From contig CM075989.1 in assembly GCA_038087875.1 (NCBI GenBank), forward strand, positions 18,972,001-19,036,000: DNA of 64,000 nt. The letters run 5' to 3'. This stretch comes from Malacoraja senta. Lineage: Eukaryota. Positions 36,401 to 58,491 of the stretch are shown piece by piece (within the stretch, counting starts at the first letter, position 1; each line of letters opens with the position of its first letter). The translations under genes were made by a program, and so were the position numbers. Below the pieces are notes generated by a model. It was not told where the DNA came from. It ran no database searches and worked only from the letters and a program-made list of their open reading frames with translations.

Positions 36401-39400
36401 GCTGCCAAACTAAACTTCTTCAGATGAGAATTATTTTTCAAAGCTTCCGCAAAATCTTTTAACGTTGGAATTGGAATATTCTGAGGACAAATTCAAATAA
36501 TTGAGTTCTTTCTCTGCTGTTAGTCCTCATTAGTTTCAACCAGTCAACCAATTTATTCGTGGACCAACGCAACCGTTTTCAAACATCGTAGCCATATTTA
36601 CAAAACCTGACTATCTAGAAAATCTGCTTTTTAGATTTTGTTCGAATGTTAGTTTTTAGTTTTAGAGATACAGGCCTTTTGGCCCTCCGAATCCGCACCA
36701 ACCAAAGATTCCCACACATAGCACTACCCTACACACTCTAGGGCCAATTTAAATTTATACTAAGCCAATGAACCTACAAACCCATACGTCGTTGGAGCAA
36801 ACCGAAGGTCTCAAAGAAAATCCACGTGGTCACTGGGAGAACATACAAACTCTGTACAGATAATAACCGTAGTCGAGATCTATTTATTGACTGCATATTA
36901 CTCATGGCTTTTACAGGTGTCCAACTTACCTCATATTAAATACTTAAGAAGGAACTGCAGATGCTGGAAAATCGAAGGTAGACAAAAATGCTGGAGAAAA
37001 TCAGCGGGTGAGGCAGCATCTATGGAGCGAAGGAAATAGGTGCCTTTTCGGGTCGAGACACTTCTTCAGACTGAAGAAGGGTCTCGACCCGAAACGTCGC
37101 CTATTTCCTTCGCTCCATAGATGCTGCCTCACCCGCTGAGTTTCTCCAGCATTTTTGTCAACCTCATATTAAATACTGGTTTGTATAAGAGAGAAAGGAG
37201 CATCTTTTTCAAGTAATTACTTGGGTGTCATCCACTTGAAAAAAGATGGTCCTTTCTCTCTTACACAAACCAGTATTTAATATGAGCTAAGTTGGACACC
37301 TGTAAAAGGCATGAAAGGAGGAGAGCTTGTCAAGGAACAAGAGTCTGGCTGAAATCATCGGAACCAGTTTGAACAACTCAACCATGGCAAAGACTTGATG
37401 CCAAACTACAGTACACTATCTGCTAAAAATCTTAGGCCTGCTGCATTCAAGTTTAAATAGGTAATCATTAAACTGAAAAACAAGGGGTCTCCACAGCATA
37501 CAACCTCTGCTAAATACATCATGGCTGAGGGGTGATGCTGGTGCTGAGTAACAGGCTGCTATAAGTACATCCTTACAAATCTAGCATGATTAGTAAAGTT
37601 AATAAATGAAAACATCATTGTGCCAAAAGATTATTAAAGTAGCTTTTCAGCTTTTATTGCAATAAGCCAGGATACATTGGTTATTGGTTTATTGTTGCCA
37701 AGTGTACTACCATAATTTTGTGCTATTGAGGCAAATCATATCATACACCAGTACATCAGGCAGTGCAAATGAGAACAGAGTGCAGAATATAGTGTTACAG
37801 CTACGGAGAAAGTGCAGATAAAAAAGTGCAAGGGTCGTAGGTAGATTGGAAGATCTAAAATACTTCAAGTCAATGCCTACTAAATGAAATTGCCATTTTT
37901 CAAAAACATTAATACCATGTCATTGAACAACAGGACTCTTACCTTTATGTTATTAAGATTAACTTCCACAAGCCCAGGATCATTGGCTTTTATTCGTTGT
38001 AAACTTTCTTCTACATTTGTTGGGTTGGGCGGTTCATCCAACACTGGTTTGACCTTCTCACCTTTGACAACATCTGGAAGGTACCATTCAAAGCAGGTCA
38101 GAGGCACGTTTTACTACAAGACATACGTATTGTAGCAACATTTGTTGCAACACTCGATCAGAAAGCACGTTATGAGGAGGGACATGGAACTTTAGATGAA
38201 GACAAATTGATAAAAGTAAAAACCAGGCTGGTGAATTAAATCCACCTTGGGAGGAACAACAGAAAAGCAGAATATAGTTTAAATTGAGACATTTTAGAAT
38301 GCTGTTGGAAAGAGATTGAAATACACATTTTACAGAGGTACAACAAGTAATACACAAGGCAAATGTTGGCCTTTATTGTTGCGAAGATTGAGTAGACCAA
38401 TTTGGAAGACTTACTAAAAAGTGTACAGGTCTTTGGCAAGACTAAACCTCCTTAGTTAAAGGGATATACCTGCATTGGAGAAGTTCAGAGAAGGCTCTTG
38501 GATGCAAGCAGAGAACAACTGATCCCGTAGTGCCTATACATATTGGAAGTTTAGAAGAACGACACATGACAGTGTTGGCAAGAATGGGGGAGTCCAGAAA
38601 ACAGGGAGTACACGGATCAGAATAAGGGGTTGACAATTTCAAAATGAGATGAGGAATTTCTTCAGAAGATCATAAATCTATAAAATTCTCCCCCTCAAAG
38701 AGCTGAGTTGAGGCTGTCACTAAATGTGTTCAAGGCTGCAGTTTCGGTCTGGCCCAAGTCACTGGTAATGGAAGGGAAGCAGGTGGGAAAGTAGAGTTGA
38801 GGCCAAGATCAGAGCAGCTATGACCTGTAAGGAACGGCAAAAAAAACTCCAAATGCTGATGCAAGAGACTGTTTTGCTCAAGATTCCAGCATCCGCAATG
38901 TTGGAGGAATTTAGGAGGCAAGGCAGTTGCGGACAGAAATGGATAGACAATGGTTCAGGTAGGACTATGTCTGAAGAAGGATCCCAACCCAAAATATTGT
39001 CAGTCCATTTCCCTCGACAGATGCTGCCTGACCTGCTGAAGTCCTCCAGCAGCTTTTTTTGTTGCTCAAGCTCCAAAGGGATGTATACCCTAATCCTGCT
39101 CTTATGTCAGTTTACACAACATAATATTTTGTCTAGAATACCATGAAATCAGTAATGTTCTTTCAGCATGAAGGCCACAGTTAATTTTCAAGCAGATATT
39201 TAACAAGTTAAATTCTCCAACTTACTGTTCAACCTCCCTTTGATTCCACCAACTGAATCACAGTAATGCGTGTTGCTCAAAGTGTGCATTCCAAGAATGG
39301 CTGGAATTAAAAAAGATGAAATTAATAAAATCTTAACGACAGGTTTGATAACCTTTCAACAATGTCTGCTATGCTACAAAATAAATGTAACAAACTAGGA

Positions 39401-42400
39401 AGGTTGTAACTGATTAGTTCAATTACTGTCAGTGTGTTTTCCCTTGAATGATACACGAGGCACGCCACCGAAGAATGGAATGGATAATCTACCTTAATTG
39501 AAATTAGATCAATCATGTTTTCAAACATTTTATATGCTGCACAAAGTATGGATTTAAAAGTTTAATCTTGAAGTAAATTGCAGCTAAATGTAAGTGGCTG
39601 TGGTTCCTATAACGTGGCAAACTGCCGGAATTCACCATTTGCCACAAAGTCAGTCACACCGCTAATTATTCTCCAGATGCAAACAATGAATGTAAAGCTA
39701 AATGTAGATTTAGAATCATAATTTCAAAATCATGTACTATGGGAAAGAAATCAAAATATTTTTAAATTATACAGACCCTAGCCTACAAATGGATACAATT
39801 ATGGTCCATGAAGACAGAGTCTGGGTATAGAAGATGTTTTGAGTGTATTTGAGATCATTGGAAAACATCCATGAACTGTACAATGATCAGTAAGATTTAG
39901 GGGAATACATTCTATTACTGTGGCATTGGGTGTTAATCTCCTGATTTTTATATACTGCCAACAATGTTCATATGAAAGACCACACAAACGCCACTTGTGC
40001 CGTAGATAATGATCAATAGCGTATCTAGAAATAGCACACTCCATGTTGGTCAATAGCCAGCCCAGACACTCAATGAACAATTTGGTTTTGGGGATTCTAA
40101 TTACTGGATAAAGACTGGTTAAAGGTGGCATACCTTCTGTCGTTCTGTGGACATAATTACTCAGTAAGGACTTCTTTAAAATTCTAGATTATAAATCAAA
40201 CTTCTCACAGAGAGTGGTGAGTCTGTGGATTCTCACAGAGAGTGGTGAGTCTGTGGATTCTCACAGAGAGTGGAGAGTATGTGGAATTCTCTGCCTCAGA
40301 GGGCGGTGGAGGCGGGTTCTCTGGATGCTTGCAAGAGAGAGCTAGATAGGGCTCTCAAAAACAGCGGAATCAGGGGATATGGGGAGAAGGCAGGAACGGA
40401 GTACTGATTGGGGATGATCAGCCATGATCACATTGAATGGCGGTGCTGGCTCAAAGGGCCGAATGGCCTACTCCTGCACCTATTGTCTATTGAACTGCTG
40501 AGTTTTAAATTCTGCAGCTGCCGTGGCAGGATTTGAATTGTTAGTTCAGGCCTCTGGATGACGTCTATTAACTACAGCAAATGAAAGCATCAAGCGGATG
40601 ATGCAATTTATACAATGCAACAAAACTCTTGATAATCCAGTACCCAACACAAAGTGCTGGAGGACCTTGGCGGGTCAGGCAGAATCTGTGGAGGGAATGG
40701 ACAAACGACGTTTCGGGCTGAGACTATTCTTGAGACCCAAAATATCATCTGCACAGTGCCTCCACTGATGCTGCCTGACCCGCTGAAGTTTTCCAGCACT
40801 TTGTATTCTACTCACGTTTCCAGCAACTAGGGTTTCTTGCGTCTTACTCTTTTGTCAACTTATTTACCAGGTCTGGTTACCCAAACTCCCTCCTAACTTA
40901 CTGAGCTTTGCTTTCCCATTCTCCCTTTAAACTCATCTGATTCACTGGAAAATGTTATACTACTCCATAAACACTTGATAAAACTGAATTGGATTATATC
41001 CAACATTCTGGAAAAGCTCAGTCCCACAGCACCAAAGTCCTGAGGGTGGCAGAATAGCAGACTCGGGGGTTAGATTGCGCAAGTTATTAATTCATAAATT
41101 GGGGATAAAATTTCTAGTCAAAAAACTTGATATCCTACCCACCCAAGATAAATATATCCTCTAAATTTCCCCCCACCAGAAGTGAAATTTTGGTATTTGC
41201 TGCTTATTAAAATCAATTAAAGCCAAGTTTTAAATTACAAAAAACAAACCATATTTATTTTTGCACAAATGCCATCCATCGTCAAACCAAAGAGAGAAAT
41301 GCAAAGTTCTGCTGGAGATGCTTTACCTGCAAGATCACAGAGCTCATTATCTGATGCACTGGTCAAAGCTTCTTCCAGTTCTGGATCCAGAATCACTTTC
41401 TCTTCTATACGTTGTTCCATCGGCTTGTGCTTGGGCAACCATGACTTTCCTGTGACAAATTATATTTCAATTAATCTTACATAAAACAAGTGCAGTGCAG
41501 GACATTAAGGAACAGTCCTTTCAGCCCACACTGTCCGTGCCGAACATGGTGCCAAGATGCATGTCCATGTGCCAATCTAAAAGCCTCAATACCATTATTG
41601 CATCTGCCTCCACAAGCACCCCTGGCAGCACATTCCAGGCACCCACCACCCTCTATATAGAAATACTTGGCCCACACACCTCCTTTAAACTTTGCCCCTC
41701 TCGCCTTAAAACTATGCCCTTAGATTTTGACATTTTCACTGTATGGAAAAGGGTCTATCTACCCTCAATTGCCCTCAAGGTGACATTGTTAAACTACCAC
41801 CCTGAACTGCTGTAGTGTTCCAGATATAGGTACTCCCCACTTCACTAGATACTGGATAGAGGGACATCAAGGACCCAGACCCTGTGGTGGTGAAGACCGT
41901 ATTTCCCCATCATATAAATCAACAAATTGGACCACCTGCAGGTGGCAGTATTCCAGTGCACTGCTACCTTTGTCCTTGGTGACAGGGATCATGTGTGTGG
42001 GAGGTGATTTATAAAGAAAATATCTTTATGGCACGGAATGAAACTATTATTGGGCTGCATTCTTTAACAAAGGTCAGAATTCAAAATACAAAATTCTCCA
42101 GGATTCAAACACCTTCACGGAACAGATGGCTTGTCATTATAGTCATAGAGTGATAGAGTGTGGAAACAGCCCCCTTGGCCCAACTTGCCCTCGCCGGCCA
42201 ACATGTCCCAGCTACACTCGTCCCACCTGCCTGCGCTTGGTCCATATCCTTCCAAACTTGTCCTATCCATGTACCTGTCTAACTTTTTCTTAAATGTAGG
42301 GATAGCCTCTGCCTCAACTACTTTGGCAGCTCGTTCCATACACCCACCACCCTTTGTGTGAAAATGTTATCCCTCAGATTCCGATTAAATCTTTTCCCCT

Positions 42401-45400
42401 TCACCTTGAACCTATGTTTGGGCAGATTACACTATGGAGGATGCTTGTTTCATGATCTCTATTAATATAAGTTGCCCGACTTCTAGTTTAAGGGCTTTAC
42501 AGGATGTTACTTATAAGAATGTGTAAAAGTATTTACATGCAATTGAAAAAAAAAGAACACACTCCCTCGGTATTTATTCTAACAGCTACATGTTTGATAC
42601 ATGTTTTTTTTTTCTTCTTGCAAATGTATCCAAAACTATGAAGTCCTTCGTAAGCAATGCCTTTACACAGCCAGCTAATAGTTTTAAGTATTACTTCAAA
42701 TTATTATTATTATTATTATTACTTTTTATTTTATTTTTATTAGAAGTACAATAATGTAGTACATAAGTACTTAATACACACTGAGATATTACAGTTCATG
42801 TACAACTTCTTATTTTTAATTTAACAATAAAACAGAAAATGATAAAAGGAAAGATAGAAGAGAGAGTATCGTAAGAAGTGGTGATAGTGTTAGTGCGTGA
42901 AATAGTAAAGAAAGCCCGAAGAAAGAAACAGAAGGTAAACAAAAAGGTAGAAATGGGTGAAGAGAAAAAAAGAAAGGAGAGAAGAAAATAGAGAAAAAAA
43001 AGAAGAAAATAAAAGGAAAGAAATTGAGAGATATACCTATTTAATATCTTTACCCACCCCTGACTTATTTCTGACTGAACAATTTCTGCAGAAGATTACT
43101 ATCAAATGCCATTTCCATGCAAGAAAATAAAATCAGGAAGAACAAATAGTAAATTCAGTGGAAATTATTTGTATCATTCCCATCTGTAGATTAAACAAAA
43201 AACACAATTATCCCTCATTGCAGGGACAAGAATGGATTACTAAACACTGCTCAGAATATAGTGAGACTTTTAGATAACTGAGTCTATCTGTTTTTCCGAC
43301 CGAATAATGAAAGGCCTAGATGGAGTGGATGTGGAGAGAGTCTAAGACCAGAGGGCAGAGCCTCAGAATTAAAGGACATACGTTTAGAATGAAGGTGAGG
43401 AGGAATTTCTTAAGCCAGAGGGTGGTGAATTTGTGGAATTCATTGCCACAGACGGCAGTGGAGGCCGTCATTGGGTATTAAGTGGAGAATGATAGGTTCT
43501 TGATTAGTAAGGGTGTCAAATATTACAGGGAGAAGGCTGGAGAATGCGGTGGAGAGGGAAAAGTAAATTAGCCACAATGGAATGCAGAGAAGACTCGATG
43601 TGCCAAATGGCCGAATTCTGCTCCAATGTCTTTTGTCATCCAAAAAGGTCAAATCAATGCCACATCAACCCATTCCCCAGCTAATTCAGATTATACACTG
43701 AGCCCATATGTCAAATTGAACAGTAATCCTACAGTTACATAAGCAACTTGGAGCTGGCGTTATCATTGTAATTTATAAAATATTAAACAGAAGAGCATGT
43801 GTAGAAGCAGTAAACAACTAGCACAGGGCTCACTATTCAGAAATTTATAAATTTAAATTTCAAAACAAGCCATTTTTTGAAACACACAACACAACACAAA
43901 ACACAGAATATAAAATTAAACAGCTTTTCTCCCCATAAGTAACACTGGCAAAGCCGTATTTTTTGTCCATCATGAAGTGTTTATTTCAATTGGTTTTCTA
44001 GATGAAGGTATTAGCAGCATGGGGAAGGCCACAGTACAGAGCAGATCATGTGGGAATGACAGTTTTCCTCGTGCACAGGGCTGTTGAACTATGGTGCTTT
44101 AAAAACAATGTATAACCAATTTAGTACTGTCAGTCAAAAAGCTCAAGATGGTTCGGTGTGGTTCAGCAATTTCATAACTTATGGAAGCAATTGAACCAGT
44201 CCACCTTCCTTAAACACCTGAAGTAAAAAAAGTTAAAAGTTAAATGCATTAACATCTGAAGAAGGGTTTCGGCCCGAAACGTTGCCTATTTCCTTCGCTC
44301 CATAGATGCTGCTGCACCTGCTGAGTTTCTCTAGCATTTTTGTGTACCTAGCATTAGCATTAGCAGGGTCCACCCTGTTTCGACTAATGCAATCAACCCA
44401 ATGTGCACAAACAAAAGATCAAATAGAACAAGTTGTCCTACACCTTTAGGCTGTGCACGCCAAACGCAAGAAGAAGAAGGAGATCATTAAAATTACCTAT
44501 TCGTTGACTACGGGACCAATAGTTTAAATCTAGATTAAAAATTTTTTTTTTTAAAGGAGTTACCCTTGCAACTGGTAACGTTATACATTAGGCAAAGACC
44601 TGGGTGTTACTGTTCACCACAGTTTATGGACTGTCTACAAATACTTCAGGATAACCTATTTTTGACCAGCTATTTTATGGCTACAACATAAAAGGCATCC
44701 TGCAACAAGTGTTACACCTCCCAGCAGTCCAAACCTGTTCCATTACCTACAATGCACAACTCAGGAAGCTCTGACATGAGATACACACCACCCATGACAA
44801 ATCAGCCTAGTTGACTGGTACCACACCTAGCTCATTAAACATTCGTCCCATTCTTAGTCACGTGTGTGACCAAAACTATGGAAAATTGTGAACTACATCT
44901 CTTCTAATTCTGAAATCATTACAGGTATATTGTTTTGTGCTGTATATATATATATATATGATTCATATTTTTTTCAAAGTTTATCAAGTGACATTTTTAT
45001 GGGATGGTGACAATGTTTGTTTAGGGTCAGAGATCAAATATGACTGGTCATGTGTGTGACCTCACACGGAAGCATTTTTCCCCATAAATTTTATCTTACA
45101 AACTCTGAATTTAAAAAAGCTAGAGTGTTCATATCTTTAGCAGACATGCATTATAATTCTGTGGGTAGGGAAATAGCAATGAATAAGATTAATCCCTTAC
45201 AATAAATTTTTAATGTATTACTTTATGTGATGACATCTGGTCACGTGTGTGACATTTGGGTCCACTTTCCAACGAATGGCCCACTCCTTCTCTTCAACAT
45301 TGATGAAGAAACAATCCATTTCTAAGTCAACCTCTTACCTGCACTGTCAAGTATTGTGCCAGGCATCATATACTCTCCACTAGTACTAATGATTTGGCAG

Positions 45401-48400
45401 AAAAGAGAAATATTTTCTTTGCTAATATTTCTGAAATGGATGCTGAAATGTTCCTATAAAAAATGGTGAAAATTACACAGAAGTGGGCAATGTGGTGAAA
45501 TGAGTAGTAAACCTATTTCAAATTAGCAGTATAATTTCTTTATTCAGATTATTTTTGAATGAGATTTGGTATTAAAGACGTTAAATCTTTTTAATTCTTA
45601 AGTCACTATTTACTATCAGTTGATTTACCACATTCCAAATCTTAAACCTTAAAATTTAAAGCTTAATCCATTAAGAATTTATTCAGCTTACAAAAACTAT
45701 TCCAGACCAATTAGTTTGCGGCACAAATGTCTCAATGTAATTTCCCCTAGCACCTTAAGTATTTATAAATAAAAGATATCAATGCCTCAATTTTTTTGCC
45801 ATAACAGCAGCAGGGTGGTGCAGCGGTAGAGTTGCTGCCTTGCAGCGCCGGAGACCCGGGTTCGATCCCGAATGTAATGTCTGTATGGAGTTTGCACGTT
45901 CTCCGGTGACCGCGTGGGTTTTCTCCGAGGTCTTCGGTTTCTTCCCACACTCCCAAGACGTACAGGTTTGTAGGTTAATTGGCTTGGTATAGGTGTAAAT
46001 TGTCCCTAGTGTGTGCAGGATAGTGTTAATGTGCGGGGATCGCTGGTCGGTGCGGACTCGGTGGGCCAAAGGGCCTGTTTCCGCGATGTATCTCTAAACT
46101 AAATTAAGCTAATCATTTGGCAAGAACTGCTTCCACCATTTAAAACCAGTGACCTCATTCATTCAGACGGATTCAAAACATGGGTTACCGGAATGCTAAT
46201 TCTATACCTACAAACCATTTTTTAAGGGGCAGCATACTGCAGTGTTGGCTAAAAGCAGAGCTATTGCAAACAGCCAATCTTACATTTCTTTCAAATCCAA
46301 TGTCACATTAAGTTTCAGAAATGTCGCTGGAAACAATTATTCTGCAACCCAATATCAAGATACCTGCAACATGAAATGCAAGGGTAGCTTCACATTAACA
46401 GCATATTATATTGATGACCACAGACATTTTATGGCAAACCTTCCAGTCATTTTGACAAGAGACGCATGGAACTGTGTAATAATCTTACCATTGTAGTTTA
46501 GTTTGCACCAAGTTATATTTAAACAAGGCATTAAGATTAGGTCCACATTTCTGATTTGATGCAAGTTCAGATGCAATACCACATACCACAAAAAAGAAAC
46601 AAAAAATTATGGCCCAGTAAACTGTGGGAAAGGAATACGAAAACATTTGGAAATGAATTGAGGAAAGTTTCACATACCATGAACAATCCTTTAAACGTTA
46701 GGGGTAGAGATGAGAACAAACTCAAAAGCAAACAGAATATTCCCCATTAATTGAAGATGGATCCGTTTGTTAACCAACTGCAAAGGCAACTCATTTTAAA
46801 TGTCAAAAAATCAGCTTCTCCAAATGAGAACCACAGGTTAATTAAGTTTTAATTCTAAACAGCCGTTTAGCAATATTTTTGAATAAAAGAAACTCAGTAA
46901 ACTGGTGCATCATTATTTTCCTTATCTCACACCATTAAAGGTTGGAACAAGGTCACAATGTCACCAATAACTACAGAAGAAAACTTGGACATTAAAGTGG
47001 AAACCAAGAAGAATAAAAACAATTTGTTTGTCCCATGAGATTTTGAGTGTGGGCGTACATGATAGGAAAAATAATTGATCAGAAAGTCTTTCTTCCGAGG
47101 GATTTCTCACCTGAAGTAATGGCAGCTGCTGCTCCTGTGGTTGGCATTAGGGTGAGCAGCAGAGAGGACTGGTTAGCAAAAGCCAGCAAAAACGGTCAAT
47201 AGAAAACACAGAGTAGCACAGCGTGCAAGGTTTGAGAAATAGAATATACTTTACATTAGAAATATTAAATATAAATACAGCAGTAACAGTGGACAGGCCA
47301 TGCAACAATTGCAATCCATGTACAAAAAAACGCACCTGCATACATCTGGTCAAGGCATACAGCAATATTCTCAGATAGCCCATGCATCTCATGCCCTTTA
47401 ATGCATGCAACAAGTTTCCATAATTCAGAGAGTCCATTCCAAGATTTTTCCTACACAACACATACTCTAGTTAAATCTGTGTTTTCTAGATGCTAGCACC
47501 AACGAAGGAGATGAGGAAGAATTTCTTTAGTAAGAGGGTGGAATCTATGGAATTGATTGCCACATAAGGATGTGGAGGTCGTCAATTGATATTTTTAAGG
47601 CAGAGATTGATAGATTCTTGATTAGTACGCATGTTAGGGGTTATGGGGCGAAGACTGGAGAATGGGGTTGAGAGGGAAAGATAGATCGGCCATGATTGAA
47701 TGGCGAAGTAGACATGATGGGCCGAATTCTGTTCCTACCACTTATAAACTGTATGTTTTACCGTATGTTTTAAGATGTAAATCAGCTATAATCTATTTAT
47801 GTGGGATACAGATTTGCAGATCAAAACCGTATGCATTTTGGAAGAAGAATAAGTAGTAAACTATTTAGTAGCTACACTATTTAAACCTAGTTTTCAAATG
47901 GAATTAACTATTTCTAAAATGTTCTCACAAATTTGGTATTTGATGCACATCCTTGGAAATAAACATGGTGCAATTATCGGAGAGATGGAGATTTAAAAAA
48001 AATCAAAAATGGATCCTGAGAGTATTTTAGAATGAAATAAGATGGAAAATTGAATTGAAAAAGCAAATTACGAACAAATACAGAAAAAAATAAAGGAATG
48101 AATGAATACTGGAGCTGCATTGTGGAATACTAGTAACAAAACAAATTGAGCGCTGCAATGGAGACAGGCTAACATTTCCCTTCTGTACTTGGTCAGAGAT
48201 TTTAATAAACTAGGTTTTAATCTAACCTATTGATGATCTTGAAGGTCAAAATACCAACAGCACTAAGTAGAAAGTGTTGGTAACAAGAAATCACTTATGT
48301 GCAGGTGTCAAACACAATTAAAAAGATCAGGTCTTGCATACATGGCAAAGCAAGTGAGTAATGCTCTAACAAATACTACACAGGTAAATAAATAAGTCAA

Positions 48401-51400
48401 TAGTGCACTGCAGTAAGTCACAAGCCATGGCAGCAGACAAACAGTTTAAGAAAAAGAATGGCAGTGTAGGTTACGGATAAAATAAAATATTGATGCTGCC
48501 TGTCCTGCTGAGTTACCCCAGCACATTGCGTCTTTCCTTGTTAAACCAGCAGCTACAGTTGCTTGTTTCTAGAAGATTAAAATACTGACCAACTTACTAA
48601 AATGAATTCCACTTTCAAAACTCCTGCAGTTTAAATAGCACCATGGAGTCTTTTAGATCTATTTGATTAGGCACATTTTATGACTTGATTCGAGATCTCA
48701 AAATGTACTTCAAATAATGCAACATTACCTCAGTACCCCATGAGATTATTAGACTGCTTATGCGCACAAATCCCACACCCACCAATTTAAATTGCTGCAT
48801 ATTGTTACTAAGCCGAATAGTCTACAAAACAGTAATAATAATGGATAGCACTAAATAATAGAAAAATCGGTCTAGACCACTTGAAAAGTTTGTCCCTGCT
48901 CATTTCCACATCGACTACAGGGGACATATTTTTTTAAATTAGATTTCCATTTTCCCTTTATCATTTTTCTGGTAATTCAATAAAGCTGAACATCAAGAAT
49001 ATATAAATCATCCATCCCAAATACCCCAAAATAACATTAGGCTATGAGTAAAACTAGTTAAAGTTAAATAAACATGAAAAATACTGTAAACATTTCCTGT
49101 TCTGATAAAGGTGCCAACCTCAAAACATTAAATATTTCTCTTTCCACAGATGCTGCCTGATCTGTTTAGTTTACAACATTTTTGGTTTTATTTCAGATTT
49201 CCAGCATCTGCAGCTTTTTGACAAACTTTTATTTCAGGTGTATCTTCAGTACTCAAGTTGAAGTGACATTAAATGTACATCAATATCCAAGTTCCATAAA
49301 TTCATAAATTTGCGAGAAAAGAAAATGGGGGATAAAGAGGAGAAATGTAAAGACCCAAAGTAGCTGCTAAAACTATCAGCAAAATCCTTTCTAAATAAGA
49401 GAGAAAGAAAGGTAAGAAGAATGATCCATTAAAATAGATTTGTTAAATAAAAATGCTGCACGTTTGCATAATGGAGGAAGAGGAGGTGGTACAAAGAAAA
49501 GCAAATAGAGAAGCAAATGAAATCAAAATGTAAAAAATTTGCAAAGGGTTGAAGGAATTCAAAGTAAATCTTTAGAACCGCAGCTTTCACCAGCTTTAGT
49601 TTAGAGATACAGCGCAGAAACACGTCCTTCGGCCCACCTCGTCCGAGCCGACCAGCGATCCCCGCATATTAACATTATTCTACACACACCAGGGACAATT
49701 TTTACATTTACCAAGCCAAATTACTTACATACCTGTACGTCTTTGGAGTGTGGGAGGAAACAGAAGATCTCGGAGAAAACTTACGTAGGTCACGGGGAGA
49801 ACGTACAAACTCCGTACAGACAGCACCCGTAATCGGGATCGAACCCGGGTCTCCGGCGTTGCAAGCGCTGGAAGGCAGCAACTCTACCGCTGCGCCACCG
49901 TGCCGCCCAGTTAGTACAAAACAGTTGAGGAAACCTCCAATTGTTTATTCAAACGAATGGAAAATTACAATTAGCATTTGAATGGTAAAGGAAGTGAGGT
50001 AATTGGAACAGTTTGCTCCTTCTATGAAAGGAACTGGAACCTAAGTGAAAGAACGTCTGAGTATTTGGTCATGCGTCTGCCCAATTAGAAGCACAAATGT
50101 GTGAAGGAAGAGGTTGTATGCAACTAATCCAACTGATATTTGGAGGGTGTCAGTAACATGGTAGGTGACGGGACGTTTATAAATTATGTCCATAAAAAAC
50201 TATATGTGGACTTCCAAAAGTGAGATAATCCTATAATCCAAGTCAGTAGAAAGAAATTAAGGTGTATTCTCCACTTTGCTAGAAATGGGTATTCTATGTT
50301 GTCCTGGGGTTTCGGAGTTTTAATTTAGTTGTAATTATTTATATTTCGGGACTTGGGTGTTGCTGGTAAAACTGCATTTATTGGACACCCCTAAATACAC
50401 TTGAACGGAATGCCCTGTTAGTCCATTTCATTCGGCTGCATTGATAGGTATGGGGAAATAGATCAAGTACAGCACAAACAATAACTTAACTATTACCACT
50501 TTCAATCCCAGAAAGATAAAATGGCACACTTTTTAAGTGGTGGGTTAGCCATACAAAACTAATAGGATTTACATCTTCATAAATTAAGAATAAATGCAAT
50601 GTAAATACAAAAATTAAATTGTAAAGGCTAATGGTTTGCTAGTCTTGACATCATGGAAATTAGAATTTAAAGCAAGGAAACGAGGCTTCAGTTGCCCGCA
50701 TCATTACAATTCCGAGTGTTAACATTTGGTCAAACTTCAGGGTAAAATCATTGGGCTTGGAAGGCAAAATTGCAAATATTACACCAAAATGCTAAGGATT
50801 GATTGAGGACCAGCTTCACCCATCTTACAATAAAGGGCCTGTCCCACATACGCGATTTTTTCGGCGACTGCCGGCACCCGTCATAGTCGTAGCAGGTCGC
50901 CTATGTAGTCGTGAGTAGTGAAGAAAGTAAATGGCATGTTGGCCGTTATAACAAGAGGAATCGAATATAGGAGCAAAGAGGTCCTTCTGCAGTCGTACAG
51001 AGCCCTAGTGAGACCACACCTGGATTATTGTGTGCAGTTTTGGTCCCCTAATTTGAGGAAGGACATTTTTGCTATTGAGGGAGTGCAGCGTAGGTTTACA
51101 AGGTTAATTCCCGGGATGGCGGGACTGTCATATGCTGAGAGAATGGAGCAGCTGGGCTTGAACACTCTGGAGTTTAGAAGGATGAGAGGGTATCTCATTG
51201 AAACATATAAGATTGTTAAGGGTTTGGACACGCTAGAGGCAGGAAACATGTTCCCGATGTTGGGGGAGTCTAGAACCGGGGCCACAGTTTAAGAATAAGG
51301 AGTAAGCCATGTAGAACGGAGTTGAGGAAACACTTTTTCTCACAGAGAGTGGTGAGTCTGAGGAATTCTCTGCCTCAGAGGGCGGTGGAGGCGGGTTCTC

Positions 51401-54400
51401 TGGATGCTTTCAAGAGAGAGCTATATAGGGCTCTTAAAAATAGCGGAGTCAGGGGATATGGGGAGAAGGCAGGAATGGGGTAATGATTGCGGTGCTGGCT
51501 CGAAGGGCTGAATGGCCTACTCCTGCACCTATTGTCTATTGTCTAGTCGCCCAAAGAGTCATACCTTTTTCTGGTCGCCGCTGGATTTTCAACATTTTGA
51601 AAATTTTCGGCGACCTGCTGGCAGTCGCCGAAAAAAAACGCGTAAGTGGGACATGGCCTTAAGATGTGTTCAGAATAACAAGTAGTTCAAAGATACACTT
51701 CAGGGTTCAACATTTGGATGTTACTAATGACAATGTGGACTACATTGCTATGGTCAGCTTTACAGTGAACTCTGCTTAAAGGAGACCCTACTTTTGAAAT
51801 AACGTCATAGGAATCAATACAACATTGAGTCCCTTTGATAGTACCACTTCGAAACATAAAATGACAATATGGTTGCACATTCAAGATACGCAGAGGCTAG
51901 AGATGAGGAGAGCACTTTGCAAATCTTAAAACTTTTCTCCATTACTGAAATGTACTACTATTACACTACTACCTCTGCAGAAGAGCGAGACATTTTGACC
52001 TCAGGACAAATAATACAATTTTTGCCATTAATATATGACAGGTGTTCTGAATGTTTATCATACTAGGCCTTGCTATTCATGTCAGGAAAGACTGAGAATC
52101 TCATTGGCTTAATACCTTATATGTAGTATTCATTTCGGTGAAGCGCGGCGTCGCCGGAAGAGGGGACCGCACGGCAACCGCGAGAGCGCAGCACGGATGC
52201 TGCGCGGGGGCAGAGTGATCTCCGTACGGCTGGTTCCACGAGCTTGCGGCGTCGGGTGATGACGACATCACGCAACGCGACGCGCTACGCGATGACGTCA
52301 TTTCGGATCGCGGGGCTGTGGCGGCGGTAGTGGTGATCGCGGCGCTGTGGCGGCGCCCGTGCCGCACACGTGCCTCACTGGCGGCGGCTGTGGCAGTGAA
52401 AGTTCGACTCACGGCGCTCGTGCCGCACTGGCGGCGGCTGTGGCGGTGCCCATGCCGCACTCGTGCCTCACTGGCGGCGGCTGTGCGGTAGGAATAGTTT
52501 TTTCGACATTGTTGGTTTTTTGTGAGCACCGTGCGGTGTTGGGACCAACACCGCACGGCCCCGGCGGTGTGCGTTGGACCGACCCCGCGGTCTCTGGCGG
52601 TCCACGAGCGGTAGAAACTTCCTGTTTCACCGCCAATGACCGCAAACTCGTGAGACAGGCCTTTAAAGCTTGCATCAGAACAGCTGCAGTCAACCCACAC
52701 TTCAAATTGCATTAATAAGCTACAATAAAGTCAAATTCATCGAGGTACACGTTCCTAACATATCAGCAAGGAGACTGCTTGCTCTACAAGGCGAGTGAAG
52801 CCATTAATGTAACCTCTAAAAGTACCAACTACGGTCAATGTTAGAGCTTCAAAAACCTTTGACAGCTATTCTGCAGAGTTAATTCCAAAACCGAATACTT
52901 TTCACAAGTCTCAATTTGCGTAGTTGGGGATCAGTTGTGATACAGTAGCGCAAGAGGTGGCACAGTGTTGCAGCTGATGGAGCCATTGCCTCACAGTGCC
53001 AGAGACCTGGGATTGAACCACCGCTCGGGTACTGTGTGTGTGGAGTTTGCAGTTTCTCTTGTGACCGAGTGGGTTTCCTCCAGGTGCTCCAGTTTCTTCC
53101 CACATCCCAAAGACGTCAGGGTTTTGTAGGCTAATTGGCTGTTGTATGTTGCCCCTGGTATATAGGGAGTGGATGCGAAAGTGGGATAACATAGAACAGG
53201 GTTGTAAATATGTGGAGATCATTGCCACAGACTGCTGTGGAGGCCAAGTCTTGGGATATTTTTAAAGCAGATTCTTGATTAGTAAGGGTGTCAAAGGTTA
53301 CAGGGAGAAGGCAGGAGAATGGGGTTGAGCGGAAAAGATAGATGGGCCATGATTGAATGACGAAGCAGACTCGATGAGTTGAATGGCCTAATTGTGCTCC
53401 TGTGTAATGAACTAATGTCAACGGGTGATCAATAGCCGGTGTGGACTCGGTGGGCAGATATGTTTTATAACACCAGGAATACGAATGCTGAATCCAATAC
53501 ATACTGGTACAGGTTATTAACTAACCAAGAAGTTAGTTAATATCCAAGCTCTGCTCCACTTCTTTATGATTGCACAAACCTAAGAATCACAAGGTATAAT
53601 GAAATGAAGTGATCTAAAGTACACTGTTACTTCTAATGATTTGGAATTTATATGGTTCTCACAAATGCATTCAAATAAAATCAAAAAGCTAAATTAACAT
53701 GATTTTGTATGGTGTAAGATATGATTCCAGCAGTTCTACTAGCCATGAAATTTAAGACCTAATTAGTCAAGAACTACTTGTAGGAAAGTCATTTTGGATT
53801 TTTTCTTTCCTCGACTTCAGATTTAGAGATTTACTTCTGTAGTAATACATTAGAAGTTTAAGCAAGCTCAAAAAACAATTCTAACGGTAAATACTGCTAA
53901 TCTGCTGGCCAAAGGAAGTTGCAGGATTTCAAAGTGACGTTCTTAACAGGCTCATTACTGGAACATGGATTAAGCGGTAGAAGGTACAAATGGGGTGCAG
54001 AAGGTGAGATGGAGCAACGAGGAAGGCATGGAGTGCATAATAATTTATACTTTGTACCACTGCGTTTTAACCATTGAATTGTGTAAAATATGTTATTGAT
54101 ATCCTACAAATGAGGTGTTGAGCCCAAAAATCTGAATGGTTTTAAAGCTTGCATATTAAATTAATTTATATCCAAAACATCCTCAGGAAAAGCCCATAAA
54201 GACTTGCAATAATGTAAACTACAGTCAAAGTCAATGTTTAGGTGCACACTGCTTTTACTTCGGGAATCTAAAATTATGTAAAGTGAGATTTCCAATTAAA
54301 AAATAAAAATTGCCTTCAATCTCAACATTCTAACCAAATAATCTATTTTCTTGAGGATTGCAAAAAAAAACAAATGCCTGATCCCATCGTCCAAGTTTGC

Positions 54401-57400
54401 AATGAGAATTATGAATATTTGAATGTTTAGGAAAGTTACATACTATTACATCAATGTTCAGCATTCTTGAGAAATAAAAATTCTTTCATAATTATATTTA
54501 TATATGCAAACACTTTTAATCTAAGATCATAGCTTGCAATGGCCTGCAATTCATTGTAAATAGACAGTTTCCATCCTTTCTTAGTTTTTAAATATATAAT
54601 AAATGATAAACATGTGGTTTTAATTATGGTATTTGTGTCAGAGCCCTGAAATAGGAGCCTGTAAAGAATGCTCACTGTATACGTATTTACAAGAGCAGGG
54701 TACTGTCGTGGGAAGCTTACTCTCCATGCTAAGGAGTGCGGAGAACATCTGGCATGGTTACTAGCTGGAAATACCAATGTTATTTAACAGTCAGTAAGTA
54801 CTTGGAAGAGCATTAAATATGCATTTAGATCAGCAATGTTTTGGCATTGCAATTCACCTCAAGGTAATAGTTTTACTTCTATGCAAACCCATCCAAGAGT
54901 TAAATACAAGACCCCAAATTGTTGCCAACAGAAAAATCCTAAATGAGAAGTAACCATACCAAGTCCCTTTAGCTTTATAAAAAATATTTTGCCTCAATTA
55001 CAGCACATTTAAAGACTGCAATTAGCATGCCTGATGCATGACAGGAACGTACTACATTGAAATACTCTCATTTCAATTTTATTACAACGTCTTCAAGTTT
55101 GTTTCTTCTTCAAAAAAGAACAGCCGGAACCACCCATTTTCCATTAACAAAATATTTCAGTGATTTTACCCTTCCTGCAGTTTTGTTCCTTTTTCAGGGG
55201 TCTTTGATTAATGTCTTAAAAGACAAATGTCTACTGATTGTCTAAAAAACATCTAAAATGGACAGCAAAACTAATTGCAAGTCATTGCATCCTGTAAGAT
55301 TTTAATTCTGAGTCGATGCTTTATTTTAATGTAAAAGTTAATAGTATAATAGATTTTTAGTTGCCAAATATGCTGAACATTAAAATAACTAATGCTGATA
55401 TTTTGTAAATGTCACAATGGAAGATTTGAAATTTTTTTTTAAATCAAGAGTAAATGACTGAAGAAAACTTTAGCATTTGACCTAACCGCTGCACTCCCGC
55501 CTAATTTACACGCACTAGACTGAAAGTGTTAAGATTCAAAATCTTTTGTAATGCATCTTTTGTTAATTCCCTCAAAGACACAAACATGCAAACAATTAGT
55601 AAAAGCCTATGGACCCAAGTTTAGCATTGTACCTTTTTTCTCTCCAGTGAAAGGCACAAAATCTTCCCTATCCTTGTATTCCAAGGCCTCCTTCTCCAAG
55701 AACACGAGTAGCTGATCTCGATCAAAGGCGCCAGTTGGAGATTTGATAGTCTGGTCCTTCTGACGAAAGCCTGCTGGCAGCAGCGCATGCTAGAACAAGC
55801 GAGAGAAAATAAGTTTATGTCTAAACAGAAAACATATTACACATAAAGCTACTCCTTCCAAAAAAGATCAAAATGCCAGGGATCTTTCTAAATATACATT
55901 AACCTTAAGTAATGGAAGGAAATAATGACAGACAAAACATGAATCTGTCTCGAGTCAATTATATGATGTAAATGGCATGTGTAATAAGGCTGGTTTGCCT
56001 TTTGTTAAGTGTGCATGTTTTAGAATAAGATTTTAGACTTAGCTGAATGAATAAATGAGGATATCATGAATCAGGAGACATTTCTGGAAGATAGGAGTGA
56101 TAAGAGACCAGTTGTTGTAAGCATAGGCGTTGAATATCACTGAGAATGGCCTCTAACTGAATATGTGCCTGATCACCAAGAGTCGCCTCTATCACCCAAA
56201 CTTAATGTTCCTCAACTCATCTCAACTATGCAATTACACAAAGTGCTGGAGGAACTAAGCGAGTCAGGCAGCATCCTTGGGAGGAATGGATACGTGACAT
56301 TTTGGCTCGGAAATAATCTTCAGGCCTTGGTGAAGCTTCCCAACCAGATTTGTTGCCTGCCAATTTCTTTTACAGATGCTTCCCCTTCACAGACCCCCGA
56401 GTTTCTCCAGCACTTTGTGTTTTGCTCAAGTTCCTTGTGCCTCCAACTACCATTACTCTTCCATCTTCTACTTACCATCAAAAGAAACACTTCAGTTTTG
56501 GTGACAACTAGTTCTGTTCACTCATCATGGAATTATTGTTCCATTCTCCCTTCCCCATCTCTAACTTTCAGTCTGACAAACATCAGGGTATCTACCCTCC
56601 AATAATTCAAGGCTCTCACCCCAACCTTCCCCCAGCAACACGTTGCTGAGAAAATATCCATGTCAGTCTCTAGAAATTAAGCGACATGAAAAAGCTGGAT
56701 TCTTGACATAAATCAGAATATACACATGTGCAAACTTATACATGCATGGACAAACATTTGACCGATTATAGAGATGGGTCAGAAGAAAACAAGCCAAAAA
56801 ACTCATGGTGCATTTTGACTAAGATCAGTGTATTAACTGTTTACTCAATAACATTATCCACTGTTTACACATCACCTCTACCCTGAGAAAGGTTTTTAGT
56901 GGATTAAATATCTAGAGGATCATTACGTCCACATACCTTGCACCCAAGGACACTTCTACATAAAAGCAAATTATTGACAAGTGAAATTTTCCATCATTGA
57001 AGTTAACTGCAACACCATTTCAAAAGTTATTTTCAAATATTACATTGCTAATTTTATTTACCCTCGTGAACAAAGGAAAATTTTCTGATAATTAATCTCT
57101 ATTTTAGTCATAACATTCCCCAAAACTCCTCCAAGCTTCTCAATACATCCTTGGTCCCATTAGCACTTTAGGATGTGTTGGTGTCATACAGCGTGGTAAC
57201 AGGCCCTCCAGCCCAACTTGCCTACACCAACCACCATGCCCCATCTACACAAGTCCCACCTGCCGGCATTTGGCCCATATCCCTCCATATCTATTCTATC
57301 CAGGTACCTGCCCAAATGCTTCTTAAACGTTGCAATAGTACCTGCCTCAACTATCTCCTCCGCCAGCTCGTTCCATACGCCCCCCCATCCTTTGTGTAAA

Positions 57401-58372
57401 AAAAGTGACAACCCCCCCCCTTCCACCCCCCCACCGTAAAACTATGTCTGGTTCTCGATTCCCTTACTTTGGCCAAAAGTGGGCATTTACCCTATCAATT
57501 CCGATCTATGCGTTACATTATACACACTCCTCTCCCCACTACTACCCCATCCATTCCTTTAACTTCATCGACAACACTCTAAGGCCTTCAATTCTGATAA
57601 AATGAAGATGATCAGAGGTAATACTGTTCTTTCATCGTGAACATTTGCAGGAAGGCGTAGGCAGATTTTGAACAAGTGAACAATATATATGTATAAACCA
57701 CAGATTAAAACGGAACTCACCGACATGATTTAATTAAAACTTATAACTGAACCAATCTTGAGACAATGAAATGCCCGGAATAAGGCTTATCACTACAACA
57801 TCAGCAATATGACATTTTCTTGCTGCACAATAATGTGGCATGCTTCTAGATGCTGGGTGATGAAGGCGTACACAAACAATTTTTCATGCTACTGAATTGT
57901 TTATTACAGATGTTGCTGTGGGAAAATGCCAAAATAAGATCTGGAAACCAGGTGGTTATAGTTGGAGATTGATAGAATGAGAACAGAACTATTATACAAG
58001 TTTTTTTATAAAGAACTCCTCTGCAGTCACACAAACCTGTTTTAACATCGCAACATACAAGCAGTAGTTGCAAAATTTAAAACAATTCCATGGTTATCAA
58101 CAAGGCTTATATCTCAATTTCAAAATTCTACACGAATAAATATTTGTGGTAATTAAACATCACAAATTTTTCTCCCAAAAAACAGATGTTTTAGCTTTAA
58201 ACTTGCAAACTAATTCTCTGGCAAATGTCAAACATTCCAGTCCCACCTCTGGGTCCAGTTCCTCAAGGGTGGTTTCCAGCTGCTTCAACTCTTCCTCACT
58301 CAGTTTGCCAAGAAGCTCATCCTCGTCAATATCTTTATACTTCTCCAGGTCCTTCTTGAATGGGAGGGCCAT
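30403..58372 (-). CDS. TMOD2/TMOD3: Tropomodulin of the TMOD2/TMOD3 type, 9 coding exons, 347 aa; join(58372-58247,55789-55633,41449-41327,39300-39226,38073-37943,36480-36373,34329-34186,32829-32685,30437-30403)
   Basis: Manual splicing gives one open frame of 126+157+123+75+131+108+144+145+35=1044 nt, from [33 protein letters not shown] to [16 protein letters not shown]. All introns are GT-AG with matching phases, and the exon layout matches vertebrate TMOD genes as I recall it. TMOD2 versus TMOD3 cannot be resolved by eye. Confidence 0.96.
31150..31350. mobile_element. Palindromic Penelope-like repeat with the centre deleted
   Basis: aatcgaaggtagacacagaatgctggag...ctccagtattttgtgtctatcttcgatt. 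Confidence 0.7.
31831..32145 (+). mobile_element. V-SINE (HE1-like), full length, intron 9
   Basis: Head, V-domain and tail intact. Confidence 0.9.
32685..32829 (-). CDS. TMOD2/TMOD3: Tropomodulin exon 9 (145 nt, LRR and cap)
   Basis: Acceptor tgcttccag; [48 protein letters not shown]; donor TAC|GTAAGT. Confidence 0.95.
32915..33210 (-). mobile_element. V-SINE, intron 8
   Basis: SINE consensus on the minus strand. Confidence 0.8.
33290..33600 (-). mobile_element. Tx1/L1-clade LINE remnant
   Basis: Degenerate ...[12 protein letters not shown]... resembles the Tx1-like ORF2 C-terminus as recalled. Confidence 0.4.
34186..34329 (-). CDS. TMOD2/TMOD3: Tropomodulin exon 8 (144 nt, LRR)
   Basis: Acceptor cttttcaaag; [48 protein letters not shown]; donor CAG|GTAAGC. 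Confidence 0.95.
34937..35199. mobile_element. PIF/Harbinger-type MITE, complete (263 bp)
   Basis: TIR AGGGCCTGTCCCACTT...AAGTGGGACAGGCCCT, TSD TTA at 34934-34936 and 35200-35202, long internal inverted symmetry. Confidence 0.85.
35380..36140 (+). mobile_element. CR1/HER1-type LINE, 5'-truncated, with an uninterrupted 222-aa ORF2 C-terminal fragment
   Basis: ORF 35385-36053 [14 protein letters not shown]...[19 protein letters not shown]...[16 protein letters not shown]; 3' tail gaatggcctactcctgcacctattttctatgtttcta. Confidence 0.92.
36373..36480 (-). CDS. TMOD2/TMOD3: Tropomodulin exon 7 (108 nt, LRR)
   Basis: Acceptor ttgtcctcag; [36 protein letters not shown]; donor TTC|GTAAGT. Confidence 0.95.
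36650..36880 (-). mobile_element. V-SINE, 5'-truncated
   Basis: SINE consensus on the minus strand. Confidence 0.75.
36902..37314. mobile_element. Hairpin MITE-like element interrupted by a Penelope-like insertion (36945-37160, 17-bp TSD)
   Basis: Arms tcatggcttttacaggtgtccaactta / taagttggacacctgtaaaaggcatga; acctcatattaaatact duplicated at 36928-36944 and 37161-37177. Confidence 0.75.
37943..38073 (-). CDS. TMOD2/TMOD3: Tropomodulin exon 6 (131 nt, start of LRR domain)
   Basis: Acceptor ccttccag; (N)[43 protein letters not shown]; donor AAG|GTAAGA. Confidence 0.95.
39226..39300 (-). CDS. TMOD2/TMOD3: Tropomodulin exon 5 (75 nt)
   Basis: Acceptor ttttaattccag; (A)[24 protein letters not shown]; donor ACA|GTAAGT. 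Confidence 0.92.
40200..40492 (+). mobile_element. CR1 3' end with a triplicated 28-bp unit at its 5' junction
   Basis: ttctcacagagagtggtgagtctgtgga at 40202, 40230 and 40258 (third copy diverged); (ctattgt)n tail. Confidence 0.85.
41327..41449 (-). CDS. TMOD2/TMOD3: Tropomodulin exon 4 (123 nt, TMBS2)
   Basis: Acceptor tttgtcacag; (G)[40 protein letters not shown]; donor CAG|GTAAAG. Confidence 0.95.
44256..44350 (+). mobile_element. Single Penelope-like arm starting at the hammerhead-like core
   Basis: CTGAAGAA GGGT TTCG GCCC GAAACGTT; flanked by gcattaacat / gcattagcat (probable TSD). Confidence 0.65.
45812..46105 (+). mobile_element. V-SINE (HE1-like), full length, intron 3
   Basis: Head, V-domain and tail. 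Confidence 0.9.
47111..47168 (-). other. Candidate 58-nt alternative exon in tropomodulin intron 3
   Basis: Long U/G-rich acceptor (tgtgttttctattgaccgtttttgctggcttttgctaaccag), strong donor CAG|GTGAGA, open phase-0 frame [19 protein letters not shown](G). Confidence 0.5.
47929..47951 (-). other. Candidate 23-nt microexon in tropomodulin intron 3
   Basis: Long pyrimidine-rich acceptor ending ttgcaccatgtttatttccaag, exon GATGTGCATCAAATACCAAATTT, weaker donor TTT|GTGAGA; converts phase 1 to phase 0. Confidence 0.35.
49595..49908 (-). mobile_element. V-SINE (HE1-like), full length, intron 3
   Basis: Head, V-domain and tail on the minus strand. Confidence 0.9.
50834..51659. mobile_element. PIF/Harbinger-type MITE split by a CR1 insertion
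   Basis: TIR agggcctgtcccac...gtgggacatggcct, TSD TAA at 50831-50833 and 51660-51662. Confidence 0.85.
50917..51544 (+). mobile_element. CR1/HER1-type LINE 3' fragment nested in the MITE
   Basis: ORF 50918-51292 [43 protein letters not shown]; (ctattgt)n tail. Confidence 0.9.
52135..52663. mobile_element. CpG-rich non-autonomous element with a Harbinger-like right TIR and internal direct repeats
   Basis: Ends gtgagacaggcctt|TAA; three copies of cactggcggcggctgtg; left TIR not seen. Confidence 0.5.
55633..55789 (-). CDS. TMOD2/TMOD3: Tropomodulin exon 3 (157 nt, actin-binding site 1)
   Basis: Acceptor cttgttctag; [52 protein letters not shown](G); donor AAG|GTACAA, phase 1. Confidence 0.95.
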
Positions 58373-58401
58373 CTCTTCGGCAGCAATGATCTCACTTCAC
58401 T
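58247..58401 (-). CDS. TMOD2/TMOD3: Tropomodulin first coding exon (exon 2): 29 nt 5' UTR, ATG at 58372, TMBS1 region
   Basis: Acceptor ttttattgttgcag; [42 protein letters not shown]; donor GAG|GTGGGA, phase 0. Confidence 0.95.
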
Positions 58402-58491
58402 CTGCAACAATAAAACAATGCAGACTTTACCAAACTAGACGCAAGAAAGTGTGCAGAGATATTTAAAACCAGTCCATAGTTTCCTCGGAAT

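What the first reader, a model, noticed from the sequence alone, without database searches (positions are those of the whole stretch)
47111..47951. Hidden two-exon cassette (23 + 58 nt) adding 27 in-frame residues to tropomodulin
Seen: intron 3 (phase 1, 14 kb) contains two exon-like segments, 47951-47929 and 47168-47111, neither a multiple of three. Together they total 81 nt and read without a stop: ...[38 protein letters not shown].... Both acceptors have long pyrimidine tracts with a UGC 7-18 nt before the AG, the known SRRM3/4 neural microexon signature. The insert falls in the disordered linker between actin-binding site 1 and tropomyosin-binding site 2. Inference: a coupled, probably neural or muscle, splicing switch that changes pointed-end capping geometry. 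It may let one TMOD2/3 gene make the tissue-specific form that tetrapods obtain from a duplicate gene. I know of no such isoform in human TMODs.
Basis: partly seen in the sequence, partly recalled or inferred. Interest (0 to 1): 0.75.

Follow-up and report, generated by a model that had tools for sequence, protein, structure and literature searches.

The report
Conserved 24-nt tropomodulin microexon

Summary
The window carries a minus-strand TMOD2/3-type tropomodulin gene of a skate-like batoid. That is not beyond chance: intron 3 holds 36 such frame-keeping pairs.

What is real is smaller. It inserts GAAAAITS between ...GEKK and GK....

- Two spliced transcript contigs of a close relative join E3, this microexon (24/24 identical) and E4.
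- RefSeq or UniProt isoforms with an 8-9 aa insert at this junction exist in Amblyraja, Rhinoraja, Pristis, Mobula, Hemitrygon, Scyliorhinus and Callorhinchus.
- The exon and its AG/GT are kept in the Narcine and Heptranchias genomes.
- The 46 nt before the exon are 96% identical between skate and shark.

The 23-nt exon has no transcript, annotation or deep-conservation support, and its frame breaks in Pristis.

Tissue specificity and regulators are inferred only. I found no paper describing this isoform.

The parts
47111..47134 (-). 24-nt alternative microexon, phase 1-1. It inserts GAAAAITS between exon 3 (...GEKK) and exon 4 (GK...).
   Evidence: Spliced transcript contigs L001 and L007 align E3 / 47136-47110 (100%) / E4. 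RefSeq X1 isoforms carry it. It is 24 nt with AG/GT kept in four other genomes.
47135..47180 (-). Upstream control region of the microexon: branch-point-like CTAAC (47176-47172, branch A 38 nt from the AG), a CCUCUCU run (47167-47161), UGC at 47161-47159, 47158-47156 and 47146-47144, and the acceptor CACAG.
   Evidence: 100% identical to Amblyraja, 96% to Pristis, 85% to Narcine and 96% to the shark Heptranchias, which is higher than the exon itself. The layout matches that described for SRRM3/4 microexons in bioRxiv 10.1101/2024.09.17.613571.
47102..47110 (-).
   Evidence: GTGAGA is invariant in five species. It is used in L001 and L007.
47299..47409 (-). Cluster of three UGCAUG (RBFOX-type) motifs 165-275 nt upstream of the microexon, starting at 47409, 47386 and 47304.
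   Evidence: Three in 110 nt against 0.49 per kb in the intron. The motif at 47386 is invariant in all five species, and the one at 47304 is kept in four. That they act in regulation is inferred.
47065..47473 (-). Conserved intronic block around the microexon.
   Evidence: It is one of the two largest stretches of intron 3 that still align to Heptranchias, and the only large one in the expected order along the intron (447 nt, 70%, E 1.6e-44). It lies inside the largest block aligning to Narcine (47425-46713, 72%, E 1.8e-94).
47929..47951 (-).
   Evidence: AAG acceptor. Absent from all transcripts and isoforms. It aligns only in Amblyraja and Pristis. In Pristis the AG is shifted by 1 nt, giving 24 nt, which breaks the cassette frame. 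Depth was zero or near zero (X25: 0.2-0.6) in the laid runs.
55633..55789 (-). Tropomodulin coding exon 3 (HALLPAGF...FTGEKK), ending in phase 1.
41327..41449 (-). Tropomodulin coding exon 4 ([10 protein letters not shown]...CDLA).
29592..58405 (-). Span of the transcript contigs' match to this gene: 5'-UTR end 58405, ATG at 58372, then E2 58372-58247, E5 39300-39226, E6 38073-37943, E7 36480-36373, E8 34329-34186, E9 32829-32685, and a last exon starting at 30437 with 3' UTR matched down to 29592.
   Evidence: tblastn and splice-site check. cDNA contigs L001 and L007 mapped to the window.

Best explanation
Intron 3 of this skate-type TMOD2/3 gene contains one alternatively spliced 24-nt microexon (47134-47111, minus strand). 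When included, it inserts eight residues (GAAAAITS) after the residue matching Tmod1 residue 92. That is at the C-terminal edge of actin-binding site 1, ahead of tropomyosin-binding site 2, so it lengthens a flexible Ala/Ser/Thr-rich spacer. Skipping gives the canonical 347-aa-type protein.

Shown:
- the exon, its borders and its use in spliced transcripts of a close relative;
- its annotation in at least seven cartilaginous-fish species;
- its conservation, together with that of its upstream 46 nt.

Inferred:
- Inclusion is regulated in the manner of SRRM3/4-dependent neural microexons: a distant branch point, then a CUCUCU element that could bind PTBP1 or U2AF2, then UGC motifs before the AG.
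- The conserved UGCAUG sites upstream give RBFOX input.
- The insert tunes how the two binding sites are spaced at the filament pointed end.

The 23-nt exon is a chance pseudo-exon.
For: - Transcripts: contigs L001 and L007 (two runs, 99.6% alike, 95-99% identical to the window exons) map as E2-E3-[47136-47110, 100%]-E4...E10.
- Isoform pairs that differ only by an 8-9 aa insert at GE[KR]K|G: Amblyraja XP_032906392 vs XP_032906393, Rhinoraja XP_078283341 vs XP_078283342, Pristis XP_051896561 vs XP_051896563, Mobula, Hemitrygon, S. canicula X5, and Callorhinchus V9KDT8 vs XP_007904272.
- Genomes: the exon is 24 nt, has CACAG|...|GTGAGA and no stop in Amblyraja, Pristis, Narcine and Heptranchias. 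The Pristis genomic translation equals its RefSeq X1 insert.
- Flank conservation is higher than exon conservation, and this is the best conserved syntenic block of the intron.
- The motif layout fits the published microexon architecture, and there is a UGCAUG cluster upstream.
- The insert aligns between Tmod1 residues 92 and 93, inside the 4PKG ABS1 construct.
- In the AlphaFold model, residues 82-123 are coil with pLDDT below 50, between helix 66-81 and helices 125-145.
Against: - There is no transcript data from the window's own species.
- The only reads I could lay were contigs of a relative that cross the exon unspliced at depth 3-6. The tool itself flags two of those runs as probably DNA, so they neither show nor exclude splicing.
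- No tissue information was available, so 'neural or muscle' is unsupported by data.
- RefSeq gives Leucoraja erinacea, Narcine and Heptranchias only the short isoform.
- The insert's sequence varies after GAAA, so any protein-level role must tolerate change.
- UGCAUG sites upstream of an exon more often go with repression.
Confidence: 0.88

Rival explanations
1. One reading: a coupled two-exon cassette (23 nt + 58 nt) adds 27 residues.
For: Both segments have AG/GT borders and jointly keep the frame. The 23-nt segment is slightly better conserved with Pristis (19/23) than its surroundings (about 71%).
Against: No protein or transcript found contains GCASNTKF or [11 protein letters not shown]; every insert seen is 8-10 aa. 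The 58-nt acceptor AG reads AA in Narcine, and the 34-nt part has a 1-nt indel there. In Pristis the first segment is 24 nt, so 24+58 breaks the frame. 36 equally good frame-keeping pairs exist in the same intron.
Confidence: 0.03
2. The upstream AG at 47169 is an occasional alternative 3' splice site. It would give a 58-nt exon that shifts the frame, making an unproductive, NMD-targeted isoform.
For: CCAG|T is kept in four of five species, with a pyrimidine-rich tract before it.
Against: The AG lies only 4 nt after the likely branch-point A of CTAAC, too close for normal use (established knowledge of 3' splice-site choice). It is lost in Narcine. No transcript shows it.
Confidence: 0.05
3. 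The microexon is used in relatives but is silent in this species, leaving only a conserved relic.
For: There is no RNA evidence from this species. Some species have only the short isoform annotated.
Against: The exon, both splice sites and the 46-nt upstream element are 100% identical to Amblyraja, where the X1 isoform is annotated, and 24/24 identical to the transcribed exon of L001 and L007.
Confidence: 0.05

Closest known systems
RefSeq/UniProt long isoforms of cartilaginous-fish tropomodulin-2: Amblyraja radiata XP_032906392.1 (isoform X1), Rhinoraja longicauda XP_078283341.1, Pristis pectinata XP_051896561.1, Mobula hypostoma XP_062922049.1, Hemitrygon akajei XP_072889246.1, Scyliorhinus canicula isoform X5, Callorhinchus milii V9KDT8
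   Same: Same gene, same junction (GE[KR]K|G) and the same 24-27-nt exon. The Amblyraja and Rhinoraja insert GAAAAITS is identical to the window's.
   Different: These are automatic annotations or a cDNA entry in other species. I found no paper describing the exon. The insert varies after GAAA (AITS, ATTS, AATTS, SSAS, GATS).
SRRM3/4-dependent neural microexons, as described in bioRxiv 10.1101/2024.09.17.613571
   Same: Length up to 27 nt and a multiple of 3. Branch point and pyrimidine element set far from the AG. UCUCUC...UGC enhancer between them. Strong 5' splice site. Flanking introns more conserved than the exon. Located in a disordered protein segment.
   Different: Tissue pattern and SRRM3/4 dependence were not tested. 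No tetrapod or coelacanth tropomodulin retrieved showed this insert, although 90% clustering can hide isoforms.
Teleost TMOD2 models with an insert at the same junction: Sander lucioperca A0A8D0DHK2, Oryzias sinensis A0A8C7ZZN1, Takifugu rubripes H2V2V8
   Same: An 8-10 aa insert exactly after GE[KR]K.
   Different: The peptides are unrelated (GVCLSTES, GFFKPFST, GLCSSTNFHS). I found no homologue of the shark element in bowfin intron 3. Homology is therefore undecided.
Tropomodulin-1 at the actin pointed end (PDB 4PKG/4PKH, 8F8T, 8IAH)
   Same: The insertion site aligns between Tmod1 residues 92 and 93, inside the crystallised ABS1 construct and before the TMBS2 helices.
   Different: No solved tropomodulin carries an insert here, so its effect on capping is unknown.

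Membership tests
Tropomodulin (TMOD2/3 type) | N-terminal tropomodulin domain plus LRR cap domain (PF03250, PF27087), with the conserved exon structure | tested here: met
   The nine coding exons mapped all have AG/GT borders. The eight joined translate to 336 aa that are 95% identical to Amblyraja and Leucoraja tropomodulin-2/3, which carry both Pfam domains.
Alternative cassette microexon | Exon of 3-27 nt, a multiple of 3, present in some spliced transcripts and absent from others | tested here: met
   24 nt. Present in L001, L007 and the X1 isoforms; absent from the 347-aa isoforms of the same species. This was shown in relatives, not in the window's own species.
SRRM3/4-regulated neural microexon | UGC motif between branch point and AG, preceded by a UCUCUC-type pyrimidine element, with the branch point far from the AG | tested here: met
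   CTAAC has its branch A 38 nt from the AG. CCUCUCU is followed by UGC at -27, -24 and -12. All are conserved from skate to shark.
SRRM3/4-regulated neural microexon | Flanking intron sequence conserved as well as or better than the exon | tested here: met
   Against Heptranchias, the upstream 46 nt are 96% identical and the exon 83%.
SRRM3/4-regulated neural microexon | Neural-enriched (or endocrine) inclusion | not testable with these tools
   No tissue metadata were available.
SRRM3/4-regulated neural microexon | Inclusion depends on SRRM3/4 | not testable with these tools
   This needs a minigene or knock-down experiment.
   No transcript or isoform carries either the 23-nt exon or the 34-nt extension.
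   In Narcine the acceptor is lost and there is a 1-nt indel. In Pristis the first segment is 24 nt.

The most novel reading that the evidence does not exclude
The microexon would be an ancestral jawed-vertebrate switch at the ABS1/TMBS2 junction of the single TMOD2/3 gene. Cartilaginous fishes would have kept it, teleosts might have kept it in diverged form, and tetrapods would have lost it once the TMOD2/TMOD3 tandem duplication supplied a separate neuronal paralogue. That would be a clean case of gene duplication replacing splicing-based isoform diversity.
Probability: 0.2. Interest if true: 0.55.

Novelty: already known. Interest (0 to 1): 0.3.

Why it matters
Tropomodulins cap the slow-growing end of actin filaments. 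The spacing between their first actin-binding site and second tropomyosin-binding site is thought to set how they sit on the filament end. An eight-residue spacer that can be switched by splicing, held for the whole history of cartilaginous fishes, is a natural experiment on that spacing. It is also a candidate member of the vertebrate microexon programme in a cytoskeletal gene.

The exon is already present in automatic annotations of sister species, so the value here is mainly corrective.

Tried and rejected
- RNA evidence from public runs. The runs holding exon 3 (X19, X20, X25, X23) gave only unspliced low-depth contigs and repeat pile-ups, and the tool itself judged two of them probably DNA. 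This was inconclusive.
- Building a full-length query by aligning window exon pieces to a snake tropomodulin. MAFFT scattered the fragments, so I dropped it. I reached shark proteins through a representative search instead.
- Possible origin of the insert from exon 9. The microexon's AAAAIT resembles exon 9's RAAAAITK. I rejected this as coincidence because other species' inserts read ATTS, ATAS, AATS, SSAS and GATS.
- Resemblance of the 23-nt exon's peptide (CASNTKF) to the Takifugu insert (LCSSTNF). It does not align without gaps, and the segment is not conserved beyond Pristis, so I rejected it.
- A homologue in bowfin TMOD2 intron 3. I found only T-rich chance matches.
- Loci for Hemitrygon, Mobula and Cetorhinus (no DNA served) and for S. 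canicula X4 and Latimeria X1 (not on record).
- Literature. No paper links tropomodulin or Tmod2 with a microexon.

Full report
**Observation.**
On the minus strand, exon 3 of a tropomodulin gene ends at 55633 (...FTGEKK, phase 1) and exon 4 starts at 41449 ([10 protein letters not shown]...). Segment 47951-47929 is 23 nt, with an AAG acceptor and a GTGAGA donor. Segment 47168-47111 is 58 nt, with a CAG acceptor and a GTGAGA donor. Spliced between exons 3 and 4 they give a stop-free 27-residue insert.

I mapped the gene with tblastn and by splice-site inspection. The exons are E2 58372-58247, E3 55789-55633, E4 41449-41327, E5 39300-39226, E6 38073-37943, E7 36480-36373, E8 34329-34186 and E9 32829-32685. 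All have AG/GT borders. The last exon starts at 30437.

**Chance.**
I applied criteria that both reader segments satisfy. Under these, the 14.2-kb intron contains 48 pseudo-exons and 36 ordered pairs that jointly keep the frame without a stop. Shuffled sequence gives 12 +/- 13 pairs, and the antisense strand gives 3. With stricter YAG and 65% pyrimidine rules there are still 5 pairs, and the 23-nt exon fails the filter. The pattern alone is therefore not evidence of an exon.

**What the proteins show.**
- A representative search with exon 3 gave a full-length snake tropomodulin-3-like protein (P0076).
- A word search with that protein reached Cetorhinus TMOD2.
- A second search with the Cetorhinus protein listed the cartilaginous-fish orthologues.
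- The window protein is 95% identical to Amblyraja and Leucoraja tropomodulin-2/3 and 93% to Rhinoraja and Pristis.

In the alignment, two proteins carry an insert exactly at the exon 3/4 junction. One is a Logan transcript product, P0282 ([16 protein letters not shown]). The other is Callorhinchus V9KDT8 (GERK-GAAAGATS-GKAW).

Cluster members and a junction-focused search added RefSeq isoform pairs that differ only by this insert:
- Amblyraja X1/X2 (355/347 aa, GAAAAITS)
- Rhinoraja X1/X2 (GAAAAITS)
- Pristis X1/X2 (GAAAATTS)
- Mobula and Hemitrygon X1/X2 (GAAAAATTS)
- Scyliorhinus canicula X5 (GAAASSAS)

**Transcript mapping.**
L001 and L007 are Logan contigs from two runs. They are 99.6% alike, and their product is identical, outside the insert, to Leucoraja erinacea TMOD2. 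They map on the window as E2, E3, then 47136-47110 at 100% identity, then E4 to E10. The real exon is therefore 47134-47111.

**Genomic conservation.**
I fetched the orthologous loci of Amblyraja (L002), Pristis (L003), Narcine (L004) and the hexanchiform shark Heptranchias (L005).
- Most of intron 3 no longer aligns with Narcine or Heptranchias.
- The block around the microexon is the strongest match in Narcine (47425-46713, E 1.8e-94).
- It is also the largest match in the expected order along the intron in Heptranchias (47473-47065, E 1.6e-44).
- In all four genomes the exon is 24 nt, stop-free, and flanked by CACAG and GTGAGA. The translations are [24 protein letters not shown] and GAAAATAS.
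- The 46 nt upstream (47180-47135) are 96% identical between window and shark. The exon is 83% identical, and the more distant flanks 66%.

- The acceptor AG at 47170-47169 reads AA in Narcine.
- The 34-nt stretch has a 1-nt insertion there.
- That AG sits 4 nt after the likely branch A of a conserved TGCTAAC.
- The 23-nt segment aligns only with Amblyraja and Pristis.
- In Pristis its AG is shifted by one base, so the segment is 24 nt. Then 24+58 breaks the frame, and 24 nt alone ends in T+GA, a stop.

**Read laying.**
Read laying was uninformative. Contigs of a relative cross 47031-47315 unspliced at depth 3-6, like other intronic stretches. The 47752-48145 bins are empty in three runs and 0.2-0.6 deep in X25. 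The tool marks two of the runs as probably DNA.

**Mechanism (inferred).**
The upstream element reads, 5' to 3':
- a branch-point-like CTAAC, with the branch A 38 nt from the AG;
- CCUCUCU;
- UGCUGC;
- a further UGC at -12;
- CACAG.

This is the arrangement described for SRRM3/4-dependent microexons: branch point and pyrimidine tract displaced upstream, leaving room for a bipartite UCUCUC...UGC enhancer that binds SRRM3/4, SRSF11, U2AF2 or PTBP1 (bioRxiv 10.1101/2024.09.17.613571).

Three UGCAUG motifs lie 165-275 nt upstream, against 0.49 per kb in the intron. One is invariant in all five species. Regulated, probably neural and/or muscle, inclusion is thus plausible, but I could not test it.

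**Protein context.**
The insert aligns between Tmod1 residues 92 and 93. That is inside the ABS1 construct of PDB 4PKG and before the TMBS2 region. An AlphaFold model of the long isoform puts residues 82-123 in low-confidence coil (pLDDT about 28 over residues 91-110), between helix 66-81 and helices 125-145. The likely effect is an eight-residue lengthening of that spacer.

**Beyond cartilaginous fishes.**
Among about 300 tropomodulin representatives, no tetrapod or coelacanth protein has this insert. Clustering at 90% identity can hide such isoforms. Three teleost TMOD2 models have unrelated 8-10-aa inserts at the same junction. Bowfin intron 3 shows no homologue. Only one TMOD2/3-type gene per cartilaginous-fish species appeared in the hit lists.

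**Novelty.**
The exon is already in RefSeq and UniProt for sister species. I found no paper on it. It is a correct but ordinary microexon, and the two-exon cassette is not supported.

Noticed in passing
window 30701-30766 (minus), between E9 and the last exon: A stretch translating to [19 protein letters not shown] matches the extra penultimate exon of shark long isoforms (Mustelus X2, Chiloscyllium X2, Pristiophorus X1: FFIHLASCPAMKFQ). In two of those isoforms it shifts the last exon into another frame, and that frame is also conserved in the window (30437-30318).
   Followed up: partly
proteins P0376, P0169, P0175, P0166, P0199, P0215: Coelacanth, reptile, bird and mammal TMOD3/2 'X1' isoforms that are 4-9 aa longer use an alternative C-terminal exon (VWS.RV...SSLQP-type tail) in place of VRKRRVEGD. 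This is a second conserved tropomodulin splice variant, unrelated to the microexon.
   Followed up: no
proteins P0379, P0380, P0383: Teleost TMOD2 models carry 8-10 aa inserts (GVCLSTES, GFFKPFST, GLCSSTNFHS) at the same GE[KR]K|G junction. This could be a diverged homologue or an independent microexon.
   Followed up: partly
proteins P0275, P0324 (Scyliorhinus canicula X2, X6): There is a 12-aa insert (ADLKLDSKTTLR) between exons 4 and 5 in catshark isoforms. tblastn found no clear counterpart in the window's intron 4.
   Followed up: partly
window 45782-46175, 47555-47751, 48343-48539, 49525-49918: Very abundant interspersed repeats inside intron 3, with summed contig depths of 1e4-3e5 in all four laid runs. 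The one at 47509-47727 also has diverged copies elsewhere in the Amblyraja locus.
   Followed up: no
RefSeq Leucoraja erinacea XP_055517081.1 vs Logan contigs L001 and L007: Only the short 347-aa isoform is annotated for little skate. Two transcript contigs whose product is otherwise identical to it include the microexon, so that annotation appears to miss the long isoform.
   Followed up: partly
window 23513-23870: A run of 358 N (assembly gap or mask), outside the gene. I left it alone.
   Followed up: no
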